64,000 nucleotides of DNA from Lama glama (taxonomy: Eukaryota): contig CM052824.1 in the NCBI GenBank assembly GCA_028534125.1, positions 42,718,001-42,782,000 of the forward strand. Reading direction: 5' to 3'. This document shows positions 17,621-62,944 of the stretch, piece after piece. The position numbers and the translations under genes are program-made. The first letter of the stretch is position 1; the number at the start of each line of letters is the position of its first letter. The notes beneath the pieces were generated by a model. The model made no database searches. It was not told where the DNA came from and saw only the letters and a list, made by a program, of their open reading frames with translations.

Positions 17621-18120
17621 NNNNNNNNNNNNNNNNNNNNNNNNNNNNNNNNNNNNNNNNNNNNNNNNNNNNNNNNNNNNNNNNNNNNNNNNNNNNNNNN
17701 NNNNNNNNNNNNNNNNNNNNNNNNNNNNNNNNNNNNNNNNNNNNNNNNNNNNNNNNNNNNNNNNNNNNNNNNNNNNNNNNNNNNNNNNNNNNNNNNNNNN
17801 NNNNNNNNNNNNNNNNNNNNNNNNNNNNNNNNNNNNNNNNNNNNNNNNNNNNNNNNNNNNNNNNNNNNNNNNNNNNNNNNNNNNNNNNNNNNNNNNNNNN
17901 NNNNNNNNNNNNNNNNNNNNNNNNNNNNNNNNNNNNNNNNNNNNNNNNNNNNNNNNNNNNNNNNNNNNNNNNNNNNNNNNNNNNNNNNNNNNNNNNNNNN
18001 NNNNNNNNNNNNNNNNNNNNNNNNNNNNNNNNNNNNNNNNNNNNNNNNNNNNNNNNNNNNNNNNNNNNNNNNNNNNNNNNNNNNNNNNNNNNNNNNNNNN
18101 NNNNNNNNNNNNNNNNNNNN
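17621..18120. other. Assembly gap (500 N)
   Basis: Run of N. Confidence 0.99.
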
Positions 18121-20310
18121 TGTTAAGTAACTGAAAAAGAGAAACCATACAATCACCACAATAGATGCCAAAAATAAAATTGATAAAATCCAATATTAAT
18201 TAGTTATAAAAAAAGATCAGCAAACTAGGAACATAGAGAAACTTCCTCAACCTGATAAAGAGCATTTATGAAGCACCTACAGTTAACATCATTCTTAGCA
18301 GTGAAATATTATTAAGATAAAGAACCAGACTGAAATACCTGCTCTCACCTCTTCTGAACAAATGTGTTTTAGAGGTTCTGCCAGGGACAATAAGGCAAGA
18401 ACAAGAAATTAAGACAAGGAACTGGAAAGGAAGAAGTAAAACTGTCTCTGTTCATAGACATGATTGCCTATGTAGAAAATCTAATAAAATCTACAATAAA
18501 AGTTACTAGAATAAATAAGTATGTTTAGAAATGTTGCAGAATAAAAGATCTTTATGCAAAAATTATGTTTCTATATAGTAGCAATGAAAATCAGAAATCA
18601 AAATTTTAAAACACTATTTACAATAGCATCAAAAATACGAAATACTTAGGGATAAATCTGACAAAAGATGTGCTGGATCCAAACTCTGAAAACGCCAAAA
18701 TATTGCTGAGAGAAGATGAAGAGAACTTAAATGAATAGAGAGAAACTCCATATTCTTGGTTGGAAAATGTCAATTCTCCCCAAATTGATGGATAGATTCA
18801 ATGCAATAACAAGCAAAATCCTAACAGTTTTTTTTTTAATAGAAAATGGCAAATTGATTTTGAAAATTATACAGAAATGCAAGGGGTATAGAATGGCCAA
18901 AAAGAAGAAAAAAGTTGTAGGACTAATACTATCTGATTTCAACATTTATTGTAAGGCTAGAGTAATTAAAATAGTGTGGTGTCAATAAAGGAAGATAAGT
19001 TGATCAGTGGAACAGAAATCTAGATACAGACTCACATCTACATGGACAATTTATTTTTGACAAAAGTGCAAAAGCAATTCAGTGGAAAGAGGATAGTCTT
19101 TTCAACAATTGGATGTCCATGTGCAAAAAAGAAAAATCTGAATTTATATCTCACACCATATACAAAATGTAGCTCAATATTTATTGTAGACCTAAATTCA
19201 AGACCCAAATTCAAAACCTCGGTCTATAAAGAGTTCTACAAAAAAATAGAGGAGAAAATATTTATGACCTTAGGTTAGGCGAGGATTTCTTAGATATGAC
19301 ACCAACAGTGCACCTTAAAGGAAGAGACTGATAGATTGGACTTCATCAACATTTAAAACTTCTGCTCTTCTAAAGAGAATAAAAAGGTAAGCCACAAACT
19401 AGGAGAAAATAGCTGCAACTTATATTAATAAAAGACTTGTATTCAAGCTACATAAAAATTCTGAAAAATCAATAAGAAAAGTAACCACTTAATAAAAAAT
19501 GGCCAAAGATTTGATCAAAAATTTCACTCAAAAAAAGACAAACACGGATGGCAAATAAGCAAATGACAAAATTTTCAATGTCACTCAACATCAGGGAAAT
19601 GCAAATTAAAACCATAATGAGATACCACTACACACCCATTAAAATGGCTGAAATGCAAAAGTCTCACCGTACCAAGTGCTGGTGAGGATGTAGAGCAGCT
19701 GCAATTTATTTACTGATGTCCTGTACTGCTTTGGAAAACAGTATGCTGTGTCTTAAACACTTAAACATATACCTACCATATGATCCAGTCATCCACTCTT
19801 TAGTATTTGTCCCAGAGAAAGCATATATCCACACAAAAGCTTGTGTACAAATGTTCATGGCAGTTTTATTTGTAATTTGCCAAGACCTGGAAACAACTCA
19901 AAAGTCCCTCAGCAGGTGAAGAAATAAACAAATTGTTGTATATCCATGCGGCAGGATACCATTCAACATTACAAAGAAAGGAAGTCCTGATTTGTACAAC
20001 AACGGAGATGAATCTCAAAATAACCATGCTGAGTACAGACTCTGCATGATTCCATTGCTGTGAAACTGTAAATGAAATCGAATCTGTAGTGCCGGCACGC
20101 AGATCAGCAGAGGGGGCAGTGGAGAGGGACGGGATGATGGGCGGGCCAAGGGGGCACGAGGAAAGTTAAGGATTTGGATGTGTTCCTTATCATGACTGTG
20201 GGGACGTTTTCATGGGTGTATAGCTGCGTCAAACTCATCCAATTGCACACTTCAAAAAGGGAAGTTTATTGCACGTCATTATACCTCAATAAAAGCTGTT
20301 AAAATATGTT
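18121..20310 (+). mobile_element. Ancient L1M LINE-1: degraded ORF2 3' half plus 3' UTR
   Basis: ORF 18731-18988 reads as L1 ORF2 (MSILPKLMDRFNAI...KLILK...LSDFNIYCKARVIKIVW); many stops and frameshifts; ends tatacctcaataaaagctgttaaaa. Confidence 0.92.
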
Positions 20311-21303: not shown

Positions 21304-24193
21304 ATCTGGATTCATTTCTCATTTCAGCCTCACAGCTGTCCTTTGAAGTAGGGTTATTATCCTTCCCATTTTACAGAAAAGGCAACTGAGACCCATGGAG
21401 GCTACGTAAGTCATCCATCGTGACACCTCTGTGGAAAGGCGGAAGCAGGACTTGAACCAGGTCTGTCTGTGCCCAGAGTCTACACCCTGACCCCCTGCAT
21501 GGGGCTGCACCCTTAGCACACCATACAGAATCCTCCAGGAGCCTGGGTCCCGAGTTCAAGTCTCCGTGGAGCCTGATGGAGCAATTGGGGAGTCATTAGA
21601 CCTCTCCAAATTGGGAGCACTTTACTTTGTAAACTGGGCCCTTCATCCACGGCCTGGATGAGCATGGGGTGTGTGAACAGCCTCCCAACTTGTGAAAATG
21701 TTGGGGAAACAGAAGGGATCTTACATTCACTCATTTATTTACCAAGTATCCTTGGGTGTCTACTCTGTGCTTGACCTTGCACTAGGCACCGGACAACCAG
21801 TGAATAAGACACAGAGTCCCTGCTTTTGGGGCATTTAGGTTCCGAAAGGAACCTGGAGTCAGGTGGGGCCTCAAGTCCCAGCTTTGCTCCTCACAAGCCG
21901 CCAGCCCCTGGGCACTTTCCACCCGAGGGTCTCCCCTCCCCTGTAGGATGTGAGAGCACCCTCACCCCCTCCAAGGCTGTGATTGGCGATCAGATGAGAA
22001 AACAGGTGTAAGGCTCTCGGCGCAGACTGGGCGCTTAACAAGGGTGCAATGAACATTGTTTTTATTATCAAGGATGATGACACCACTGCTTGAATAAAAC
22101 GTTAAGCTGGGGTTGTAATTTCCTTCTCTTTTGAGACTTCTGCCCCCTGTTAGCATCCATTCATTTATTCCCTTCTTTCCCTCAGGGCCTTCCAGGGATG
22201 GGACCACCACGCCCCCAGCCTTAGCCGACTGGACCAGGACTGGACACCTGCCCCAGGCCAGACCAACCAGACCAACCAGGCTTTGATTTGGCCTGAGAGA
22301 CCTTGGCCAGTCCTTGCTGGTGGCTAGCGCAGGAGACAGACTCTGGCTCCATGGCCCACGTAGACAGGAGAGAAAGAAGGCTGGGCTGCAGAAGGAGGGC
22401 ATAGAGCGGGGATGACAGGAAGGGGGTCTGGCCATCTTTTCTCCTAGGCCCTGCTGCCCCCTCCCTCCCCACCAGGTCCCTGTGCTGCCTTCCCCCTCCT
22501 CCCCATTTGAGCAATTGGTTCCCAGCTCTGACTTAACCCAGCCCAAGTCTCCTGACCCTCCTGTTTCCCTAGAAACCACATCAGTGCCCTCCCCTCCCCA
22601 CAGCTGCTCTGCATCCCTCTGGGCCGCACACCCACATTGTGTCTTCTCTGGGGCCTGAGCTGGACCCCGAGCTGCCCAAGGGCCTGGGTCCTGGCGGGTC
22701 CTCAGCCAGTTTCCTGAAGGAAGGAGTGAATGCATGAGGGAAGGAGAATGGAACCAGAGGGAGGAGCCGGCCCGAGGGGTGGACAGACTTGCATTTGATG
22801 CTGGCTCCACTGCTCTGGCCTCCCTGCGCATCTGCCTCCCGCCGCCCGCAGCATGGGGAGGCGGGAGAACTGCAGGTGACCTGGGGAAGCTGCCCAGCAT
22901 ATGACAGCACCCAGTCAGGGCCATCTGAGGTGACATTGGTGGTCTTAACTTTTTCAAAATGTCTTTGCACTTTCCTCAGAGATTGCCAATCTAGCCTCAG
23001 CTTCCTTCTTCTTCCTAAACATCTTGCAATGCCCCACTCCTGGAGCCGTCTCTTCTGGGGACAGGAAACAGGAGTGCCCCCACCATTGTCAGAGGCTGTG
23101 GAGGAAAAGGGTGGGTTTAGACATAGCTGCGTGGATTCTTGGTTGGCTGTGAACGTGGACCTAATCACCCAGAGCGGGAAGCGGCATCCCAGCCTGGAGC
23201 CCCTGGGATCTGCCCCCTTCCCCCAACTGACGGGAAGAAGTGGCAAGGTGGGAGAAGAGGGGACACCTTCAGCATCTGCCCCAGGAGGTGCTCAGCCAAT
23301 GGATGGTTGACAGGTAGGGAAAGGGAGGGCCCCAGAGGAGAGGCTCAGCACCCGCTGAGGGGGCAGGGGTGGCCTCAGGTCCCTGCCCGTGTGGGAACCT
23401 CACTACTTACAGCTCTGGGGATGAAGGTAACCCTCTTCTGGCTGCAGAGAGAGCACAGCCCTTTAATGTAATGGGTTGGGCTTTTTCAACATTTCTAGCA
23501 GCTCATCGACTTGAGAAACATATTAACTATAAATTGTTAAAATTCTATGTATCTAAATCTGGCCTTTTCTGATGCTCAGATTTCAGCCCCACATCATGGA
23601 CCTGCCCCCGGCCCTCCATCTAATCAGCCAGGCTCAGAGGCCCTGACTCTCTCCTCTCAGGCTCACGGACTGGCCCTGAGAGGTGACTGGACGGGGCCCC
23701 TTGCTCTCCGTCCTCTGACACCAAAGGCTCTGAGCGCTCATCTGGGAGGGAAGAGGGCTGATGCAGAGAGTGGCTGGACCAGCTCCCAGTCTGGAGCCTT
23801 GGGCGGGTCGCTTCCCCTCCTTGGGCCTCGGCATCCTCATTTCCTCACCTCTGGAAAGGAGTTGACGGCTTCAGTGGGCGATGGGACAAAGTGAGAGGTG
23901 GCAGCCCAGAGCAGTCACTCCTTCGTGCCCACAGCTCCACCCTGCGAAGACAGAGCAGCGTGGAGAATCGTGTGGAATATTTTAGCTACAAGTGGTGGGA
24001 AAGTCAACCACCAAAATCAACCTAAGCAGAAAGGGAATATGTTTTGAACACGGTAATGGAAAAGTATGTGGGTGTCCAGACCCCCGCTCTGCTCCTGCAG
24101 CCCCTCCCCCTGCCCCCTGCCCCACCCACCCAGCTTAGGGTCTTGGCACCCTCACTTGCGCAGCATCCACAGACCTTGTCACCACAACAACAG

Positions 24194-24197
<4 letters not shown>

Positions 24198-24248
<51 letters not shown>
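24198..24248. repeat. (AAT)17 perfect microsatellite at a MIR tail
   Basis: Uninterrupted aat run, followed by MIR antisense end (catttagtgagtaccaactatgtgccag). Confidence 0.95.
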
Positions 24249-24249
<1 letters not shown>

Positions 24250-24629
24250 GAAACATTTAGTGAGTACCAACTATGTGCCAGCCCTGTGATAAATGTTTTC
24301 CATGCATTATCTCATTTATCTCCTAGGGAGTAGAGATTCTGAGTTAATCTGCTGAAGATCCATTTAGTAAACAGTCAATTCATCAGAAGACCAGTTTACC
24401 AAAAATTCATTTGCCCAGTGATCTGTGAGATGCTCAGTGACAGGAGGTACATCAGCCCTGGTCTGGGCCTAGGAACCAGGCAGCGGTTTCACCAGAGAGG
24501 TGGAAACAGAGGCAGGGCAGTGGCTTCGAAAACCAGGATATAAATCTGCAAAAAAAAAGGACTTCCAGGGACTGCTGCTGAAAGGGAAGGAAGCGCATCT
24601 ATTTGATGAATTGCTTTTCTGTGAATGGA

Positions 24630-31880: not shown

Positions 31881-34800
31881 TGAGTGATGTATATACAGCA
31901 AATATACACGTCCCATTTGGCACCCAAACCTACAGTAAACGAGCACTTAATTTGAGCTCCCTGAGTCTACTTACGTTTGATGGTACAGAAGACAGCAGAG
32001 ATGGAGGGAGAAGGAAGCTTTCCTCCTCTGCAAATGAGGGCAATGCTAATAGTTTACATTATATAGCACTTCGTATATGTCAGGCGCTATATTTAATGTG
32101 TGTGTGTGTAAACATATATACACCTGCATATTCACTCATTTAATCCTTAGATACACCCCATAAGGTGGGTGCTGTCATTACTCAGTCCATTTTACAAGAG
32201 GAAACTGAGGCCCAGAGAGCTTATGTAACTCCGTAAAGATCAGTAAATGCAGAGCCAGATTGAAATCCTGGCCTCCTAGCCTGTGCTTCCAGCCCTGACG
32301 CTGTCCTGTCTCCAGTATGTCCTTGCAGATGACCTTGAAGGTTAACTGATATATGCCTGTAAAGGCTGAGTACATTCTTGGCATATAGTCAGTGTTCAAT
32401 ACTTGCTGGCTTAGGATCGGGCGCCACCCTGTATTCTTAAGAAACAGCAGTGACTGAGCCAGACATAGAGCCCTAAGGGGCTTCCAGTCCCATGGAGAGA
32501 ACAGAGGAGTGAATGTTCACAGCACAGAGGAGAGCTGGACTAGAGAAACTTAAGGACTGTAGGAATCCAAGGAGGGGCAGGGAATAGAGGTGGAAACAGC
32601 ATGTGCAAAGGCCTGGTGGTGAGGAGGCTGGCCTGGCCCCAGGTCCAGGGATGAGCAGGGGGATCCACTGTAGCAGGAGCTAAGTACGGAAGCAGAGAGG
32701 ATTCACATGGTAATTTGGGGAAGTTCCAGGACCAGACTGAGGAAGACAAGCTTGGCATCGGGGGAAGGACAGTGCAAAGCATGCAGGATCAGGGCTGGGC
32801 TCAGGGTTAGCTCCCCACTCTGGCACTCCATGAGCATGGGGGCTTCCACAGTGACAGGTGCGGGGATGTGGGGGAGAGCCCCCTCCACTCTCTTCCCAAG
32901 CCCCCTACTCTGGGGGTGATGCTGTAGACAGACCCTGGATCCGTCAGGCTAAGGGGGTGTCAGGCGCCCCCACCTTCCCCGGGCCATCCCCTTCCTGTCT
33001 CCTACCCCGCCCTCTGAGGCTGTTCCAGCACATTAAATGATGACGCTGCCTCATTTTGGAAGCTTCCAGCTCATTAACCAGTGAGGAGGGGATGAGTTAG
33101 GGATGAGTCCCAGGAGAGAGCCCTTGCCCGAGAGCCCTCCCCTGAGCTTCCAGCGGGGAAGGGCAGGGAATGGATGTTCAGTGAGCAGCTCTGAGACCCC
33201 CATCCATGCCTTCAGGAGGCCCGACAGATCTGCGTCCTACTCACCGGAAAGGGAAGCGCCACACGAGGCCTCCCTCACTGGGTCCCTTCAGCCCTTCTAG
33301 GCAGGACCGTGACATGCTGGCTCTAAGACGGCAGACTCTGGGCCTGCTTGGGAACCGGGTTGTGGGAGCAAAGCCCAGGCCCTCGCGGGGTTCCCCTGCT
33401 GGCCACACGTGCCCCCTGTCAAGGGCCCCTTCTCCCAGGCGGCCAGCAGGGCCCACCAATGCCTCCCTGGGGATGGACATAGAAGCGGCCTGGGCAGGAG
33501 CCTGGAGCAGGCCTGTGGAGGGGAACCCACTGTGGCGGGACCACAGGGTGATGGCGGCCAGATGCTGGCTCTGGGCTCTGTGTCTCTAACCTCCCGTTTC
33601 CTTTAGAGGGAGAGAGGGGTTGAGAGATCATGAAATCTGAGTAGGGGTTGGGGAGGGGGCATTATCCCTGGCCCCAGGCTGAGAATGTGTTCCATGTGCC
33701 TGGTCCCCCAGGCAGACACTGAATAGGTGCACAAGTCAGCCTCCTCCCTACCTCCCAGGAGGTAAAGACGTGAAACTAAGGGTAAGATGGCCTCTCGTTC
33801 CCCGACCCCCTGGATGCTGGGGAGGGCTGGACGGGTAGGGAGGAGAGGGAAGCTGTTCCTGGCGGGCGGACAGGATACGCAAAGGCTCAGATGTGGGAGT
33901 TCAGATGGCACAGTAAGGGGCTGGTGAGGAGACAGGCCTGGGTGAGACAGGACACGTGCTGAGGACAAGGGACGGAAGTCTGTGTGCACAGGGAGAGCAG
34001 CCTGTTGTGTAGGACTCGGAAGGCTGAGGACTCATGTCCTAACAGGCAGATTGGGTGGCTGCTGTCACCTCTGTCTCTTCGTCCCTCTTTGTCCTCTCCA
34101 CCCTCCTGCAAGGACGGCACGCAGACCCTGAAGACTGGCAGGTGTCCCGTGCTCAGAGGAGATGAGGCTGATCCGGCGCATCTGGGTAGGGAGGGATAAG
34201 AGTGTTTTTCGTCCTCATGCTCCTTCTGTGACCATCACTGCCATCATCTACAAGGGGTAAGTGAGGCTGGTGCCCAGGCCCACCTCCAGGTGGCTGTAGA
34301 GGCCTGGTGGGCATAGAGACACAGTGGCTGGGGACAAGACGGCCATCTTCCTGGCGGGTGGGTGGGTGGGTAGGTGTGTTGAGGGATGGGGTCCTGCTGG
34401 CTCCTCCTCTGAGGGTCAGTTCCAGCCTGGACGGGGGAGGGGGGGGCTGTGGGTGAAGCCTGTCGGGGGAAGACAGGACTCTGCAAGCGGAGTGGCCTGG
34501 CTGGAGCCCAGGTCTGGTGACTGCCGGGAACCAGTGTCCAGGGAAGGGCGTTCAGTGGTGGGGCTACTCCGGTTTGGAAAGGTGTTTACAAGGCATGCTT
34601 TCCCTAGTGCCCTTTACAGCGAGCTGCATGAATCCCAGTACATCTTGGAACCCAGAACTTAGAGGCATAGATTTCTGGAGCTTCATAAACCCAGGATTTG
34701 GGATTCTGAGACTCTCAGAAAATAGAATTATAAAGGCTCAGATCCCAGAAAGTGAGCGCTCCCAGGTAGTTCAGGGCATCTAGTCTAGCAAATTATCTTC

Positions 34801-38219: not shown

Positions 38220-38377
38220 GAAGCCAGTGAACATGACCAAGGCCACGGTCCTCTACCGCCAGGAGAAGACCCACATGATGAGCACCATGGACCGCAGCTT
38301 CACAGACCAGAGCACCCTGCAGGAGAACGAGCGGCTGGGCCTCTCCTTCATGGATGCCCACAGCTGCAACCCCCGGG
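38220..38377 (+). pseudogene. PTPRU: Isolated exon homologous to the PTPRU juxtamembrane exon (probable duplicated gene fragment)
   Basis: Translates to [52 protein letters not shown](G), matching recalled human [58 protein letters not shown]; acceptor ccttcctctgcAG (38218-38219), donor GTgagt (38378); 158 bp, phase 2 to phase 1; no other PTPRU exon seen. Confidence 0.85.
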
Positions 38378-38729
38378 GTGAGTGCCTGCCCCTTCCCTGT
38401 GGCCCCCAGGCACTCCTCCCCCAGAGCCAACGGCACAGTGCCCCGCATCAGATGGTTCTGTAACATCCAGAACCAGAAGTGCTAAGCATCCTGCTGGGTA
38501 CCAGCACTGGCCCTGGGAATACAGAGAAGGCACAGCTGGTGAGCTGTACTGTGCACTGGAGGAGCCTGCAAGGGGTTGTACAAAGGTAAGGGAAACACAA
38601 GATCAAATGTAACAACTGTCAAAGAGGAGCTGCAAGGTGACGCTGTCTGAACAGAGGAGATCAGAGCAGGCTCACCGTTTACTGAGGACCTGCTGTGTGA
38701 GAGGCGGGGGATCCAGGGGCTGAGAGGGA

Positions 38730-46100: not shown

Positions 46101-47239
46101 ATAGACACAGAGATCAATGGAACAGCATACAGTTCAGAAATAGATCCACGCATAGATGGCCAACTGACTTTCAACAGAGGTATCAACATAATTCAAAGAG
46201 AAAGAATATTCTTTTCAACAAATAGTGTTGGAGCAACTGGATAGCCATCAAAAGAAAAAAAAAAGAATGTAAACCTCAACTCCTCTCACCACACACACAC
46301 AAATTAAATAAATCACAGACCTAAATAGAAGAGCTAAAACAATAAGATTTCTGGAAGAAAATATAGGAAAGATCTTTGTAACCTTGAATCAGATAAATAT
46401 TTCTTAGGACAAAAACATACAAATATTAAAAAGAAAAGAATTTGGGCATCATCACAATTTTTAAATATTGGTTCTTTGAAGGACATACTCAAAGAAATGA
46501 AAATTCAAACCACAGACTAGAAACTGTTTCCAAATCAGGTATCTGATAAAATATATAGAACTCCTACATAATATATAAAAACTCATATACACATGTGTGT
46601 ATGTATATAAACTCTTACAACTCAATAATAAGATAAACATCAATTAACAATGGGCAAAATTTCTGAATAGACACTTCACTGAAGAAGACAGACAGATGGC
46701 AAATAAGCACCTGAAGGATCCTCAACATTATAAGTCACTGGGGACATGCAACTTATAACCACAATGAGACTCAAGCATGGCCAAAATTAAGAAGATTACA
46801 CTACCAAGGAGAGGATGCAGAGCCACCAGGAACCTCATACGTTGCTAGTGGGTGTGCAAAATGGGATAGTGCTTTGAGAAACAGTTGGGCAGTTTCTTAC
46901 AGAGTTAAGCACACATTTTCTATACAACCCAGTAATTTCTGGACATTTACCAAGAAAAAAAAAACATGTGTCTACACACAGACTTGGGCGAATTTCATAA
47001 CAGCTCTGCCCACAACAGTCGCAGACTGATGAATGAATAAACATAATGTGGTGCAATCCACACAGCAGAATACCACCCAGCCATGAAAAGGGATGAGCTG
47101 CTGATACACAGAACATCATATATGAATCTCAAAAGCATTATGCAAAGCATTCTATAAGCACAGGTCAGCCTCCACAATAAAGAGTTGTTTGGTCTAAGAT
47201 AACAATATTGCTAATATTGAGAAATGCTGGTCTATCGGC

Positions 47240-47480
47240 CACAGTAGGGAGTTTTTATGTTTAATGTTGAGGATGTTCTTTGCAGGTTTTGAGCAGGAAA
47301 GCGACGTGATTTGACTTATATGACCTTAAAGTAATCACTGTGGCTGCTCAGTAGAGCAGAGGCTATTGTGGGGAGAGGGAGTCAGGGAGACCAGATGAAG
47401 GAATTACATAAGTCCAGGTGAGAAACGGTAGTGGCTTGGATGTGGGTGGGGTAGAGGAAGGCATGAGAGGTGGTCACTCA
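47240..47480 (-). mobile_element. L2 fragment (its right part forms the start of the left inverted-repeat arm)
   Basis: ggttttgagcagg...atcactgtggctgct...agggagaccag...gtccaggtgagaaacggtagtggcttgga. Confidence 0.7.
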
Positions 47481-47655
47481 TATAAGAAGCTGTTGAAGAA
47501 GGAACCGGACACTCATCCTAAAAAGATTCTCAAGTAGACACAAGCATCCTCCAACTTCAGAAGGGTTGTCATGTGGACCAGAAGTTGGTACCATTCCGGG
47601 GGCCCCAAAGATCCAGGAACATGAGTGCAGCCAATAAAGCACTTTGCAAAGACAA
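47378..47655 (+). repeat. Left arm of long inverted repeat
   Basis: Reverse complement of 48228-48515; 15 substitutions in the first 259 nt plus a 10-nt indel near the inner end. Confidence 0.97.
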
Positions 47656-48227
47656 GACCTCCCTGGATGTCCGTGCTAGACCTGTTCCTCCCACTGATGC
47701 CAAAAGACACAGTGAGCTCTGGTATAACGAGCCACCTTTTTCATCAAATTTTAAGTGTGGAAAAGATCTTAATGGTCTTCTAGTTCAACTCTCTCTTTGA
47801 TACTTGAATTCCTTCAACAAACACGTACACTCAACAAAATTATTGTCACTAAAAACATCTTCACCATCATCATCATCATCTTCATCACAATATCATCACC
47901 ACCATCACTGACATTCTCATCATTTGTCAAGTACCTGCTTTATGTCAGGCAGAGTGCTGGTTGCTTTACTTACTTGGCTGCACTGAATTCTCACAACAGT
48001 GCAACAATACAGGTAGTGATCTTGATTTACAGAGAGGGGAAAGGAGGCTGGAAAGAGTGAAGTGGCCCGAGGCAGCACAGATAATAGAAGAAGGAGGCTT
48101 TAAGCCAGATCTCTTGATCACAGAGGCAAAACTGTCCACTACCTTGCTGCCCTGAAAGCTGATCTGTGCTTGTGCCCCTCCACCAAGAAGCATGCTCTCC
48201 ATTTGGTCAGAACTGCCAGAAAGGCCT

Positions 48228-48515
48228 TTGTCTTTGCAAAGTGAAACCACCTTCCTCATTGGCCGCACTCACAATCCTGGATCTTTGGGGCCCCCGGAAT
48301 GGTACCAACTTCTGGTCCACATGACAACCCTTCTGAAGTCGGAGGGTGCTTGTGTCTACCTGAGAATCTTTTTAGGATGAGTGTCCGGTTCCTTCTTCAA
48401 CAGCTTCTTGTATGAGTGACCACCTCTCATGCCTTCCTCTACCCCACCCACATCCAAGCCACTACCATCTCCCACCTGGACTTATGTAATTCCTCCACCT
48501 GGTCTCCCTGATTCC
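48228..48515 (-). repeat. Right arm of long inverted repeat
   Basis: Reverse complement of 47378-47655; the ORF track also shows the same peptide PGSLGPPEWYQLLVHMTTLLK on opposite strands (47513-47710 minus, 48192-48380 plus). Confidence 0.97.
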
Positions 48516-48519
48516 ACCT

Positions 48520-48802
48520 GCCACCCTCTCTGCCACCCTCAATAAAAGGGCCTGCACGTTCATACTTGGAGGACCCATAGGCACTTTTTGCCTGGATGGC
48601 CCACTGTTGCCTATAGCAGCATAACCACCAAATGCTTCCTTTGTTCTTTGTGCCAGAGGACACACAAGCACCGCTTGTCCGTGTGGCTCACTGTCACCTA
48701 TAGCAGTGAACCTAATAAACTTCCCTTTGTCCTTGCCTCCTCCTTGCCTTTGGTAAAATTCTTTTTATCCACCATGATGCTGACTCCTCCATGGGTCCAA
48801 CA
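48520..48802 (+). mobile_element. 3' portion of an ERV-type LTR (5'-truncated)
   Basis: TATA-like aataaaaggg (48541), polyA signal aataaa (about 48714), ggtaaaattctttt motif and terminal ...aaca; no recognisable 5' TG end. Confidence 0.55.
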
Positions 48803-48829
48803 AGTTCGCCCTAAACATTATCTCATGGA

Positions 48830-49120
48830 CACAATACAGCTCCCAAAGTTCCAGCAATCACAGCCCCATTCCAGACAAGAAGGAGAAGGGAGAGGGAGAG
48901 TAGAGGCTCCTGCCAGCTGCTTAAGCTTTTCTTGAGAAAGCTTTCCTAGGAGCTGTACCCATGACTTCCTTTCACATTTACTGCCACCACTTCCCTAGCC
49001 ATCTGTAAGAGATTTGCCTTTTTCGCAGAGCACATGGACAGGGCCAACTGTGTTGGCATTCCGTAACTAAGAGAGAAGGGGAGATGGGACATTAGGAGAT
49101 GACAGACAGTCTGTGTCCCA
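48830..49120 (-). mobile_element. Old MLT1 LTR fragment
   Basis: aaagctttcctagga...gacttcctttcacat...ccacttccctagc...aagagagaaggggagatggga. Confidence 0.5.
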
Positions 49121-50162
49121 ACCAGAGCCAGGATGCTTAAACATGGAAGAAGCTGAGATCAGAGCTCTACCCCAGGGCTTAATCCAGGAAGTCCTCTCGT
49201 GGGATGAGGAGATGTAAGGATTCTTTCTTACTGACATCCATTTTCAAAACATTAAAAACAATGTATTAGTAGTAGATGCTCATTACAGAAAATTTGGAAA
49301 GCATACAAAAGAAAATTAAAATCCCCTATAACCCCCCCACCAGAGATAACAACTGTTGGTATTTTTGCATGTATCTTTTATTAGTTTCATGTATAGTATA
49401 TTACAAAAAGTCAGAATGTAGTTTATATTCAGTTTTATATGCTGCTGATTTCTCCAGCTCTATTATAAGCATTTCCCAACATAAATTACTTTTGAAGGTT
49501 TCATTTTAAATGGCAACACAATATTGCATCATAATTATTTTTCATTCATAAGTGATTTAGCCAATCTGCCATTGTTAGGCATGTAAATGGTTCCCAGCAT
49601 TTGGTCATTAAAAATGATGCTGGCTGACCAACTCTGCACATAGATCTTTGTCTCCACCTCTGATTATTTCCTTACGACCGATTTCTGGCTTCACCGGGTC
49701 AAAGGGTATGGGTATTTTTAAGGCTTTTGATACATACTGTGAAGTTGCCCTCATGGAAAGCTGACCTGGTTACCACTCCCTACACAAGGTCTAAGAGCAT
49801 CCTCAACAGGTTGCTCTGACTTCCCTGCCTCAGCCACCCTTCTTGGCTCCCTTGGGAAACACAAAAGAAAATGGTTACATTCTGAAATAACTTAATTATG
49901 TTTTTATCTGAAGGTATTTTTAAAAGTCAACATAATTACTCCAGTCCCATTAAGCTTAATTTGTAGCAAATTATGCCTTTAGCACGAAGCTGGAGTTGCT
50001 TTGCTGGCTGGAGTGAAGATAGGGTCTGGCTGTTTATAACAAGAAAACAGCTGGGTAAACAGCTTCAGGTCTTTCTCAGGAAGGTGTTATTCCCAGGTGG
50101 GAGCCTCAGTACCTTGGAGCTCAGGAAATGCACCAGTGCCCCAGCTGACCGAGGAGACTGAG

Positions 50163-60442: not shown

Positions 60443-60826
60443 TGTCTTAGTAAGCTCAGGCTGCTATAACAAATACCATAGATTGGGGGTCTTAAACAAT
60501 AGACACAGTTCTGGAGGCTAAGTCCAAGGTCAAGGCACTGATAGATCTGGTGAGATCTCTAGTGAGAGCCTAGCTTGCAGAAAGCTGTCTTCTCATAGCT
60601 CATTTATGTGGCAAGATAGCAGAGAGAAAAAAGATCTCTCCTCTCTCCTCTCTCTTTTTATAAGGACATTAGTCCCACAATGATGGCTCCACCCTCATGT
60701 CCTAATTATTTCCCAAAGGTCACACCTCAAAATACCACCACAATGAGGATTAGGATTTCAACATATGAATTTGGTGATGAGGGTAGGGGTGGATGCCTGG
60801 GAGGACATAGACATCATTCCATAGCA
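60443..60826 (-). mobile_element. MLT1A/B-type MaLR solo LTR
   Basis: tgtcttagt...gctgctataacaaataccataga...gttctggaggct...aagtccaaggtcaaggc...tttcaacatatgaattt...ccatagca. Confidence 0.88.
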
Positions 60827-61260: not shown

Positions 61261-62119
61261 TGAAGTAGGGTTCCTTCTGNNNNNNNNNNNNNNNNNNNNN
61301 NNNNNNNNNNNNNNNNNNNNNNNNNNNNNNNNNNNNNNNNNNNNNNNNNNNNNNNNNNNNNNNNNNNNNNNNNNNNNNNNNNNNNNNNNNNNNNNNNNNN
61401 NNNNNNNNNNNNNNNNNNNNNNNNNNNNNNNNNNNNNNNNNNNNNNNNNNNNNNNATGATGGCCANNNNNNNNNNNNNNNNNNNNNNNNNNNNNNNNNNN
61501 NNNNNNNNNNNNNNNNNNNNNNNNNNNNNNNNNNNNNNNNNNNNNNNNNNNNNNNNNNNNNNNNNNNNNNNNNNNNNNNNNNNNNNNNNNNNNNNNNNNN
61601 NNNNNNNNNNNNNNNNNNNNNNNNNNNNNNNNNNNNNNNNNNNNNNNNNNNNNNNNNNNNNNNNNNNNNNNNNNNNTTGAAGCAGCATGGATGTTCCTGG
61701 AGAATGTCATTCTAAGCGAAGCAAGCCAGAAAGAGAAAGAAAAATATCATATGAGATCTCTCATGTGTGGAATCTAAAAAAAAATTTTAAATGAACATAA
61801 GTACAAAACAGAAACAGACTCATAGATATAGAATACAAACTTGTGATTACAAAGGGGGCAGGGGGTGGGAAGGGACAGACTGGGATTTCAAAATGTGTAG
61901 ATACTGACAGGCATATGCAGAATAGATAAACAAGATTATACTGTATAGCACAGGAAATACATACAAGATCTTGTGGTAGTTCACAGCAAAAAAAATGTGA
62001 CAATGAATATATATATATATATGTTCATGTATAATTGAAAAATTGTACTCTACACTGGAATTTGACAGAACATTGTAAAATGACTATAACTCAATAAAAA
62101 TGTTAAAATAAAATAAAAT
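61261..62119 (+). mobile_element. Young lineage-specific (artiodactyl/camelid) L1 3' end, partly in an N gap, with TSD
   Basis: ORF2 end catggatg...ctaagcgaagcaagccagaaagagaaagaaaaatatcatatg, 3' UTR, aataaa and (taaaa)n tail; TSD aaaactta(c/a)ctctc at 61247-61260 and 62120-62133. Confidence 0.85.
61280..61677. other. Assembly gaps (61280-61455 and 61466-61677) separated by a 10-nt island
   Basis: Runs of N around atgatggcca. Confidence 0.99.
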
Positions 62120-62440: not shown

Positions 62441-62944
62441 NNNNNNNNNNNNNNNNNNNNNNNNNNNNNNNNNNNNNNNNNNNNNNNNNNNNNNNNNNNN
62501 NNNNNNNNNNNNNNNNNNNNNNNNNNNNNNNNNNNNNNNNNNNNNNNNNNNNNNNNNNNNNNNNNNNNNNNNNNNNNNNNNNNNNNNNNNNNNNNNNNNC
62601 TAACCAACCATGGGTCTTTGATTCTGCCTTTCCAAGAGTGCACAAAGTATTGGGCTATGATGATAAGCAGTGCCTTTGGGAAGGTCATGGGGACACCTAC
62701 TGAAAGGAGTTGGATGTCTTTGTTTTGGATACATCCAACCTCTTAATCCAACATTGGTCCTCCCCCTCTTTTTCCGATTTGTGCTCAGTGTTTTGGACCC
62801 CCTGAATCTTGATATACAGAGTCATCACTTTCTACTTTCTCATCAACCTTCAGCCACATTGGTATTCTTTCATACACTTTGATTCTTCCCCTGGGCTTTA
62901 TCATACATAAGCCCTTCCCTTTGGCAGGAATGTTCATTATCACA

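What the first reader, a model, noticed from the sequence alone, without database searches (positions are those of the whole stretch)
47378..48515. 280-bp inverted duplication with G:U-biased mismatches: candidate long dsRNA hairpin on the minus strand
Seen: arms 47378-47655 and 48228-48515 with a 572-bp spacer, about 94% identical, including perfect blocks of 56, 49 and 65 bp. The arms span an L2 fragment plus unique sequence, so they are not two independent TE insertions. By hand alignment, 14 of 15 substitutions in the first 259 nt are transitions. Of these, 11 give G:U wobble pairs if the minus strand is transcribed and only 3 do so on the plus strand (two-sided binomial p about 0.06, suggestive only). 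Weaker homology with the same bias continues about 15 nt inward. Inference: the locus could give a stem of about 270 bp, suitable for ADAR editing or Dicer endo-siRNA production, kept intact by selection on pairing or by arm-to-arm gene conversion. It could also promote inversion of the spacer.
Basis: partly seen in the sequence, partly recalled or inferred. Interest (0 to 1): 0.75.

Follow-up and report, generated by a model that had tools for sequence, protein, structure and literature searches.

The report
Local inverted duplication, probably neutral
A 290-base stretch of this mammal genome was copied backwards about 550 bases downstream; it would fold into a long RNA hairpin if transcribed, but nothing found here shows that it is transcribed or kept by selection, so it looks like an ordinary DNA copying accident.

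Summary
The inverted repeat is real. Arms 47378-47666 and 48216-48515 match at 272 of 289 aligned columns (94.1%), with a 549-bp spacer. It is the only strong self-match in the window.

It is not a dispersed repeat within the window. It has no target-site duplication of 4 bp or more and no Pfam or Rfam match. Seventeen DNA-type runs under six organism labels hold 91-95% of its sampled words.

The wobble bias exists: 13 transitions fit G:U on the minus strand against 3 on the plus (p=0.021). It comes almost wholly from substitutions clustered in the last ~50 bp of each arm end (11:1). The 192-bp core is 98% identical and unbiased (2:2). That pattern fits event-linked or strand-asymmetric mutation, or core homogenisation, better than selection on RNA pairing.

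Verdict: an ordinary neutral templated inverted duplication. This scan has noted at least 11 others in this genome. Low interest.

The parts
47378..47666 (.). Left arm of the inverted duplication (289 bp). I take it as the likely parent copy, but only on a recalled reading that an old L2-type element runs on into its outer flank; no tool here tested that.
47667..48215 (.). Spacer (549 bp), with no homology to either flank. It holds a (CAT)n tract at 47856-47907.
48216..48515 (.). Right arm (300 bp), the reverse complement of the left arm. It is 11 nt longer through 4 indels near its inner end.
47427..47618 (.). High-identity core of the left arm, pairing with 48275-48466. It has 4 substitutions in 192 bp (K2P 0.021), split 2:2 between the strands.
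47378..47426 (.). Outer end of the left arm, pairing with 48467-48515. It has 6 substitutions in 49 bp, 5 of them wobble-compatible on the minus strand.
47619..47666 (.). Inner end of the left arm, pairing with 48216-48274. It has 7 substitutions (one run of three adjacent bases) plus 4 indels; 6 of the 7 are wobble-compatible on the minus strand.
48518..48540 (.). Perfect 12-bp tandem duplication (1.9 copies) starting 3 bp beyond the outer end of the right arm. It may be a junction scar.

Best explanation
This is a neutral, single-copy local inverted duplication. A ~290-bp stretch (47378-47666) was copied in reverse complement and placed 549 bp downstream (48216-48515).

The most likely cause (inferred) is a replication template switch or fold-back repair event. 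The nascent strand copied the opposite strand backwards and then returned to its template.

The locus sits in CpG-poor, repeat-rich DNA with no promoter-like feature and has been decaying since. The excess of transitions that would read as G:U on a minus-strand RNA is a by-product of mutation, not of selection on a hairpin. It comes from substitutions clustered at the two ends of the copied segment.

Three sources are possible:
- error-prone synthesis or single-strand damage at the switch points;
- a strand-asymmetric germline mutation process, which acts on opposite strands of the two arms;
- an older repeat whose core was later homogenised.

If the region happens to be transcribed, either strand would form a long duplex and would be an incidental ADAR substrate.
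For: Shown:
- The repeat is real and unique in the window.
- Homology stops at the arm ends. Free local alignments of the flanks score below the shuffled maxima. Anchored extension tests give P=0.18 for the outer end and 0.48 for the inner end.
- There is no target-site duplication of 4 bp or more.
- There is no Pfam family in 4 of 5 arm or spacer ORFs; the fifth has one chance-level match at E=0.19.
- There is no Rfam match at gathering score in the window, nor at E<=1 in 47200-48700.
- Seventeen DNA-type runs under 6 organism labels hold 0.91-0.95 of 152 sampled words. About 15% of positions give words specific to the right arm, so the second arm exists in independent data.
- Thirteen of 17 substitutions lie in the outer 49 bp plus the inner 48 bp. 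Tests: post hoc p=4e-4; quarters test p=0.024; permutation of distance from the centre p=0.011. The strand bias is 11:1 there against 2:2 in the core.
- All 4 indels and a three-base cluster lie at the inner end.
- A perfect 12-bp tandem duplication lies at the outer junction.
- No 500-bp window in the 64 kb passes GC>=0.55 with CpG o/e>=0.6; overall o/e is 0.23.

Literature:
- Template switching creates reverse-complement repeats that form perfect hairpins at birth (PMC8794818, abstract).
- SNP and indel density is about doubled beside breakpoints of germline deletions (PMC4937565, abstract).
- A>G mutations are enriched on the non-transcribed strand, and other processes track replication direction (PMC9217108, passages).
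- Long inverted duplicates are numerous in pre-mRNAs: 54,479 that are >300 bp and >96% identical across 49 species (PMC7006430, passage).
Against: - The transition:transversion ratio of 16:1 is high for neutral decay: P(at most 1 transversion of 17)=0.0096 at a transversion share of 1/3 and 0.05 at 1/4.
- The 13:3 split is stronger than the usual size of strand asymmetries: P(at least 13 of 16)=0.028-0.13 for a 55-65% asymmetry.
- The one study I read on breakpoint-linked variants found no special mutational signature (PMC4937565, section 10).
- No microhomology is visible at the junctions (sequence).
- No outgroup sequence was available, so the direction of each change, the age of the event and the parent arm are all inferred.
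Confidence: 0.75

Rival explanations
1. Functional long hairpin RNA transcribed from the minus strand (an endo-siRNA source, regulated ADAR substrate or innate-immune ligand), with the stem kept paired by selection that tolerates G:U-forming transitions.
For: - 13 of 17 substitutions keep a wobble pair on the minus strand. P(at least 13 of 17)=3.4e-4 if one third of neutral changes did so, or 6.8e-4 after allowing for the choice of strand.
- The minus-strand fold is 62 kcal/mol more stable than the plus-strand fold.
- Hairpin-type inverted repeats do give endo-siRNAs in mouse oocytes (passage in PMC6391682 citing Tam 2008 and Watanabe 2008).
Against: - The wobble-type changes are not spread along the stem: 11 lie in the 97 bp at the ends and 2 in the 192-bp core.
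- There are 4 indels in the inner stem.
- No CpG island or other promoter-like feature is present, and there is no Rfam match.
- RNA-type runs hold only 0.05-0.10 of the words.
- siRNA production from long dsRNA is inefficient with full-length mammalian Dicer and relies on a truncated oocyte isoform in mouse (PMC6391682 passages; PMC11239679 listing).
- Long near-perfect dsRNAs are selected against rather than for (PMC7006430).
- The scan lists 63 inverted-repeat or hairpin notes in this genome, so one p of about 0.02 is expected by chance.
Confidence: 0.05
2. An older inverted repeat that is actively kept alike by arm-to-arm gene conversion, or by a second template switch that re-copied the core. 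The ends then show its true age, and the repeat may also flip the spacer by recombination.
For: - The core has K2P 0.021 against 0.154 at the ends. The heterogeneity tests give p=0.011-0.024.
- First-reader notes in this genome describe other inverted duplications with a near-identical or homogenised core (s1-862002, s1-861234; unchecked).
Against: - The longest perfect block (65 bp) is not unusual for 17 random differences (P=0.20).
- Homology does not fade on beyond the arm ends, as an eroded older repeat would suggest.
- Conversion does not explain the 11:1 strand bias at the ends.
- The arms are short, and the perfect blocks fall far below the roughly 200 bp of identity that I recall as needed for efficient mammalian recombination (recalled, not looked up).
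- Distance and divergence between repeats lower their rearrangement potential (PMC10164571, abstract start in listing).
Confidence: 0.12
3. A non-autonomous DNA transposon of about 1.14 kb with long terminal inverted repeats.
For: The inverted arms lie at both ends of a compact 1138-bp unit.
Against: - No target-site duplication of 4 bp or more at or near the ends; the best match is 3 bp and off register.
- No second copy or fragment in the other ~62 kb by BLAST or nhmmer.
- By recall only, an old L2-type element runs through the left arm boundary and the spacer holds an old MIR-type element. Neither fits a discrete insertion.
Confidence: 0.02
4. Assembly artefact: the second arm was created by misassembly.
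For: The missing 5-9% of words in the best runs is about the share of junction-spanning words.
Against: - The right arm has its own 17 substitutions and 4 indels. These give about 15% of the stretch as arm-specific 31-mers.
- Even so, 17 runs under 6 organism labels hold 91-95% of the sampled words.
Confidence: 0.02

Closest known systems
Template-switch (fold-back) inverted duplications made during DNA replication (Loytynoja & Goldman 2017, PMC5453318, listing only; Monttinen & Loytynoja 2022, PMC8794818, abstract read)
   Same: A reverse-complement copy of nearby sequence that gives a perfect hairpin-capable repeat in a single event. There are no transposon hallmarks. Small scars (indels, a three-base cluster, a 12-bp tandem duplication) lie at the ends.
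   Different: By their titles and abstracts, those papers deal with short-range events; the scale of tens of bases is my recollection. Here 289 bp were copied and placed 549 bp away. The ancestral state was not available, so the four switch points cannot be shown.
Inverted repeat pairs in pre-mRNAs that form long dsRNA and are edited by ADAR (Barak et al. 2020, PMC7006430, abstract and passages read)
   Same: About 290 bp at 94% identity with a sub-kilobase spacer. This is the size and tightness class of the putative duplexes counted there, just under their >300 bp and >96% cut-offs.
   Different: Most of those pairs are two separate mobile-element insertions, whereas here the arms are one single-copy duplication. 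No transcript, host gene or editing is shown here.
Hairpin endo-siRNA loci of mouse oocytes (Tam 2008 and Watanabe 2008, as cited in PMC6391682, passages read)
   Same: The architecture: a long inverted repeat that would fold into a hairpin with a loop of a few hundred bases.
   Different: No transcription or small RNAs are shown. The mouse loci depend on a truncated oocyte Dicer isoform; whether this species has one is unknown.
Gene-conversion-maintained palindromes and inverted repeats (recalled from the literature on sex-chromosome palindromes; no paper read here)
   Same: The core is much more alike than the ends.
   Different: Those arms are kilobases to megabases long and over 99.9% identical. 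Here the arms are 289 bp with 65 bp as the longest perfect block, and there is no cross-species evidence of concerted evolution.

Membership tests
Local templated inverted duplication (template switch / fold-back) | Reverse-complement copy of sequence lying nearby on the same chromosome | tested here: met
   272 of 289 columns identical, 549 bp apart
Local templated inverted duplication (template switch / fold-back) | Single-copy source, not a dispersed repeat family | tested here: inconclusive
   No other copy in this 64-kb window. The rest of the genome could not be searched.
Local templated inverted duplication (template switch / fold-back) | Derived state: one arm absent in an outgroup | not testable with these tools
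Local templated inverted duplication (template switch / fold-back) | Microhomology or small scars at the switch points | tested here: inconclusive
   No clear microhomology. Indels and a three-base cluster lie at the inner end, and a 12-bp tandem duplication lies at the outer junction.
Hairpin endo-siRNA locus | Inverted repeat predicted to fold into a long stem | tested here: met
   MFE -730.5 (minus strand) and -668.4 (plus strand) kcal/mol, with both arms paired end to end
Hairpin endo-siRNA locus | One transcript spanning both arms | not testable with these tools
Three RNA-type runs hold 0.05-0.10 of the words.
Hairpin endo-siRNA locus | 21-23-nt small RNAs from the stem | not testable with these tools
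   No small-RNA data could be laid.
ADAR-edited long dsRNA | Clustered A>G mismatches in RNA reads but not in DNA | not testable with these tools
The DNA differences between the arms do not look ADAR-like: 4 of 9 A/G sites have a 5' G, a neighbour ADAR disfavours (recalled knowledge).
DNA transposon with terminal inverted repeats | Target-site duplication flanking the ends | tested here: not met
   The best direct match is 3 bp and off register.
DNA transposon with terminal inverted repeats | Multiple copies | tested here: not met
   None in the window. The genome-wide count is unknown.
Conversion-maintained inverted repeat | Identity higher in the core than at the ends | tested here: met
   4 substitutions in 192 bp against 13 in 97 bp; p=0.011-0.024
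Conversion-maintained inverted repeat | Arms more alike within a species than orthologous arms between species | not testable with these tools
   No outgroup sequence was available.
Any Rfam RNA family | Covariance-model match | tested here: not met
   0 matches at gathering score in the window and 0 at E<=1 in 47200-48700

The most novel reading that the evidence does not exclude
The repeat is transcribed from the minus strand in the germline or brain. The 13:3 excess of wobble-preserving transitions then reflects selection to keep a ~290-bp hairpin intact: a lineage-specific endo-siRNA source or ADAR/innate-immune ligand born from a single template-switch event.

A milder variant is more likely, at about 0.2. 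In it, the end-clustered, strand-coordinated transitions are a preserved footprint of the duplication event itself. That footprint may recur at other inverted duplications in this genome that first-reader notes describe as polarised (s1-270872, s1-862803; unchecked).
Probability: 0.05. Interest if true: 0.55.

Novelty: new member of a known kind. Interest (0 to 1): 0.15.

Why it matters
As it stands this is one more local inverted duplication, a common by-product of replication errors.

Its modest value is methodological. The two arms of an inverted repeat expose opposite strands to any directional mutation process. A G:U-versus-A:C imbalance between the arms is therefore expected without any RNA function, and must not be read as selection on pairing unless it is spread evenly along the stem and confirmed with an outgroup.

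If the end-clustered, one-strand transitions recur at other such duplications, fixed inverted duplications could serve as a natural record of mutagenesis during template switching in the germline.

Tried and rejected
- **Rfam.** The whole window at gathering score and 47200-48700 at E<=1 gave nothing.
- **Pfam.** I scanned five ORFs that overlap the arms or spacer, plus the exon-like segment. The only hit was a chance-level match at E=0.19.
- **Further homology.** I looked for matches between the spacer and flanks and between the two flanks. None scored above the shuffled maxima. Anchored extension of the arms was not significant.
- **Other copies in the window.** I tried sensitive BLAST (two scoring schemes) and nhmmer. 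One search printed nothing and its error output was not checked, so that scoring scheme may not have run. One search found none with BLAST or nhmmer.
- **Transposon reading.** Rejected for lack of a target-site duplication.
- **ADAR or APOBEC footprints in the DNA differences.** The neighbouring bases show no enrichment: 4 of 9 A/G sites have a 5' G, and the 3' neighbours of the putative G>A sites are mixed. The enzyme motifs are recalled, not looked up.
- **Gene-conversion tract test by longest perfect block.** Not significant (P=0.20).
- **Promoter search by CpG island.** None in the window.
- **Host-gene search.**
  - One exon-like segment lies at 38220-38377 (+).
  - A Tupaia fragment named receptor-type tyrosine-protein phosphatase U matches it at 81%.
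  - Residues 51-158 of that fragment, which would be the next exons, have no match in the window.
  - Recalled phosphatase motifs were not found.
  - So no transcription unit over the repeat could be established.
- **Searches not made.** I ran no further search on the arm ORFs, because the chance of finding a cross-species ORF there seemed too low for the cost.
- **Supplements.** Supplementary files of the papers were not consulted. The supplementary tables of PMC7006430 (counts per species) might refine how common such repeats are.
- **Species.** Not established. Earlier notes of this scan call the genome a camelid (one says equine). The hits to Camelus ferus and Ovis aries proteins are about equally distant.

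Full report
**Observation**

- The repeat finder reports one long inverted pair in 46500-49500: arms 47371-47635 and 48258-48522, 265 nt, 94% complementary.
- A gapped local alignment extends it to 47378-47666 against 48515-48216.
- In that alignment 272 of 289 aligned columns are identical. There are 17 substitutions (16 transitions, 1 transversion) and four indels of 1, 2, 7 and 1 nt, all in the inner ~30 bp.
- In a self-BLAST of the whole window this pair scores E=1.2e-113. Only 3 non-self hits were found, and the other two are ~70% identical over 138-175 nt.
In the ungapped 258 nt I count 14 substitutions, 13 of them transitions, split 10:3. Over the full alignment the split is 13:3.

**What the arms are not**

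- No further copy or fragment of 47101-48900 occurs in the rest of the window. One search (BLAST and nhmmer) found none; one search printed nothing and its error output was not checked, so that scoring scheme may not have run.
- Homology does not continue beyond the arms.
  - Free local alignments of the spacer and flanks score at or below the maxima of shuffled sequences.
  - Anchored extension tests give P=0.18 for the outer end and P=0.48 for the inner end.
- No direct repeat of 4 bp or more flanks the unit, so a transposon with long terminal repeats is unlikely.
- ORFs in the arms and spacer match no Pfam family, apart from one chance-level hit at E=0.19.
- Rfam finds nothing, either at gathering score in the window or at E<=1 in 47200-48700.
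I also read an L2-type element running on into the left flank, an MIR-type element in the spacer, an L1 tail to the left and an LTR-like piece to the right. All of these labels rest on recall, because no repeat library is available here.

**Is it an assembly artefact?**

- Seventeen DNA-type runs, under six coded organism labels and nine of the 11 studies that the call counts among all holders, hold 0.91-0.95 of 152 sampled 31-letter words of 47200-48700.
- The right arm carries its own 17 substitutions and 4 indels. About 15% of positions therefore give words specific to that arm.
- Shares of 91-95% mean that most of those words are present in independent data.

**The substitution pattern**

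- The bias is real in count. Thirteen transitions would leave a G:U pair in a minus-strand RNA and 3 in a plus-strand RNA (two-sided p=0.021).
- Transitions are also over-represented: 16:1, with P(at most 1 transversion)=0.0096 at a transversion share of one third.
- The differences are not spread along the stem.
  - Thirteen of 17 lie in the outer 49 bp plus the inner 48 bp, which is 97 of 289 columns.
  - Post hoc this gives p=4e-4. A quarters partition gives p=0.024. A permutation test on distance from the centre gives p=0.011.
- The strand bias is 11:1 at the ends and 2:2 in the 192-bp core. Fisher p=0.14, so the contrast itself is not significant.
- K2P distances are 0.154 for the ends, 0.021 for the core and 0.062 overall. 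At assumed rates of 1.0-2.2e-9 per site per year (general knowledge, not measured here) these correspond to 35-77, 5-11 and 14-31 million years.
- The inner end also holds all four indels and a run of three adjacent changes.
- A perfect 12-bp tandem duplication starts 3 bp beyond the outer end of the right arm.
- Three differences are at CpG sites, and two CpGs survive in both arms (and sequence). That is what methylated neutral DNA would show.

**Why this argues against selection on pairing**

- If wobble-forming transitions were tolerated and other changes removed, the tolerated changes should accumulate evenly along the stem. Instead, 11 of 13 lie at the ends.
- The indels also break the inner stem.
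- A neutral route to the same imbalance exists.
  - The two arms present opposite strands to any directional process. An excess of A>G or C>T on one DNA strand therefore shows up as G:U on that strand's transcript.
  - Such asymmetries are documented for transcription (A>G enriched on the non-transcribed strand) and for replication direction (PMC9217108, passages read).
  - With a 55-65% asymmetry, at least 13 of 16 has probability 0.028-0.13.
- Alternatively, the end clusters may date from the event itself.
  - Template switching makes reverse-complement copies in one step (PMC8794818, abstract read; PMC5453318, listing only).
  - Variant density is about doubled beside germline deletion breakpoints (PMC4937565, abstract).
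  - That study saw no special mutational signature, however (section 10).
- A third option is an older repeat whose core was re-homogenised. The longest perfect block is not unusual (P=0.20), so there is no positive sign of a conversion tract.
- I cannot choose among these three without an outgroup.
- The scan lists 63 inverted-repeat or hairpin notes in this genome, so a single p of about 0.02 is expected by chance.

**RNA side**

- Both strands fold with the arms paired end to end: minus -730.5 and plus -668.4 kcal/mol for 1171 nt. This follows from the repeat and the mismatch split, and is not independent evidence.
- No transcript evidence was obtained.
  - Three RNA-type runs hold 0.05-0.10 of the words, and two of them are only guessed to be RNA.
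- No 500-bp window in the 64 kb passes GC>=0.55 with CpG o/e>=0.6; overall o/e is 0.23.
- The only gene-like feature is an exon-like segment at 38220-38377 on the + strand, with AG and GT splice sites.
  - It is 81% identical to a Tupaia fragment named receptor-type tyrosine-protein phosphatase U, and to hypothetical proteins of Camelus ferus and Ovis aries.
  - The next exons of the Tupaia fragment (residues 51-158) have no match in the window.
  - Whether the repeat lies in an intron of an active gene therefore stays open.

**Compared with what is known**

- Inverted duplicates able to form long dsRNA are numerous in pre-mRNAs. There are 54,479 that are both >300 bp and >96% identical across 49 species, against 144,989 tandem controls.
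- They are depleted, and weakly expressed where present (PMC7006430, abstract and passages).
- This one, at 289 bp and 94%, falls just under those cut-offs.
- siRNA production from long hairpins is inefficient with full-length mammalian Dicer and relies on a truncated oocyte isoform in mouse (PMC6391682, passages; PMC11239679, listing).
- Distance and divergence between repeats lower their potential to cause rearrangements (PMC10164571, abstract start in listing).
- With a 549-bp spacer and at most 65 bp of perfect identity, spacer inversion should be rare. The identity threshold for recombination is recalled, not looked up.

**Earlier notes of this scan**

- At least 11 inverted duplications have been noted in this genome.
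- Three of the notes listed were followed up as neutral copying accidents: s1-857553, s1-859738 and s1-859304.
- Some first-reader notes mention a homogenised core or polarised mismatches: s1-862002, s1-861234, s1-270872 and s1-862803. All are unchecked. They suggest a genome-wide test rather than support for this locus.
- Note s1-860515 places this repeat at the end of a larger rearranged block. I confirmed the exon-like segment but could not test the block.

**Verdict**

This is a real, single-copy inverted duplication, most likely a neutral product of template switching. The wobble bias is a weak, end-localised mutational pattern and not evidence for a selected hairpin RNA. Transcription, editing, small RNAs, spacer orientation and cross-species history remain untested.

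Noticed in passing
window 38220-38377 (+): An exon-like segment with AG acceptor and GT donor, encoding 52 residues. It is 81% identical to a Tupaia fragment named receptor-type tyrosine-protein phosphatase U and to hypothetical proteins of Camelus ferus and Ovis aries. The next exons of the Tupaia fragment are not in the window, so this is either an isolated exon copy or an exon beside a very long intron. The three species differ at about 10 of 52 residues, many at CpG-type codons.
   Followed up: partly
window 34162-34257 (+): This stretch matches residues 1-32 of the Camelus ferus hypothetical protein P0002 at 87.5% (tblastn). That predicted protein was therefore modelled on the same locus. 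The sheep protein P0003 also reads on into 38484-38564 (85%).
   Followed up: partly
window 48518-48540: A perfect 12-bp tandem duplication (1.9 copies) lies right at the outer junction of the right arm.
   Followed up: no
window 48569-48706: Two 51-nt direct copies lie 87 bp apart at 75% identity. They sit beside poly(A)-signal-like motifs, in what looks by recall like a piece of an LTR.
   Followed up: no
window 47856-47907: An imperfect (CAT)n tract of 17.7 copies inside the spacer.
   Followed up: no
window 1-64000: No 500-bp window reaches GC>=0.55 together with CpG o/e>=0.6, and overall CpG o/e is 0.23 although GC is 50%. There are five N runs: 1087-1186, 17621-18120, 61280-61455, 61466-61676 and 62441-62599.
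   Followed up: partly
window 19452-19622 vs 46605-46769; 60645-60772 vs 62373-62236: These are the only other self-matches in the window, at about 70% identity over 138-175 nt. They are presumably old dispersed repeats.
   Followed up: no
window about 24140-24330: Frames reading long runs of N and of I point to a long AAT/ATT-type microsatellite.
   Followed up: no
other pieces of this genome (notes s1-270872, s1-862803, s1-862002, s1-861234): First-reader notes describe other local inverted duplications with polarised mismatches or a near-identical core. If that holds up, the pattern seen here may be general to such events.
   Followed up: no
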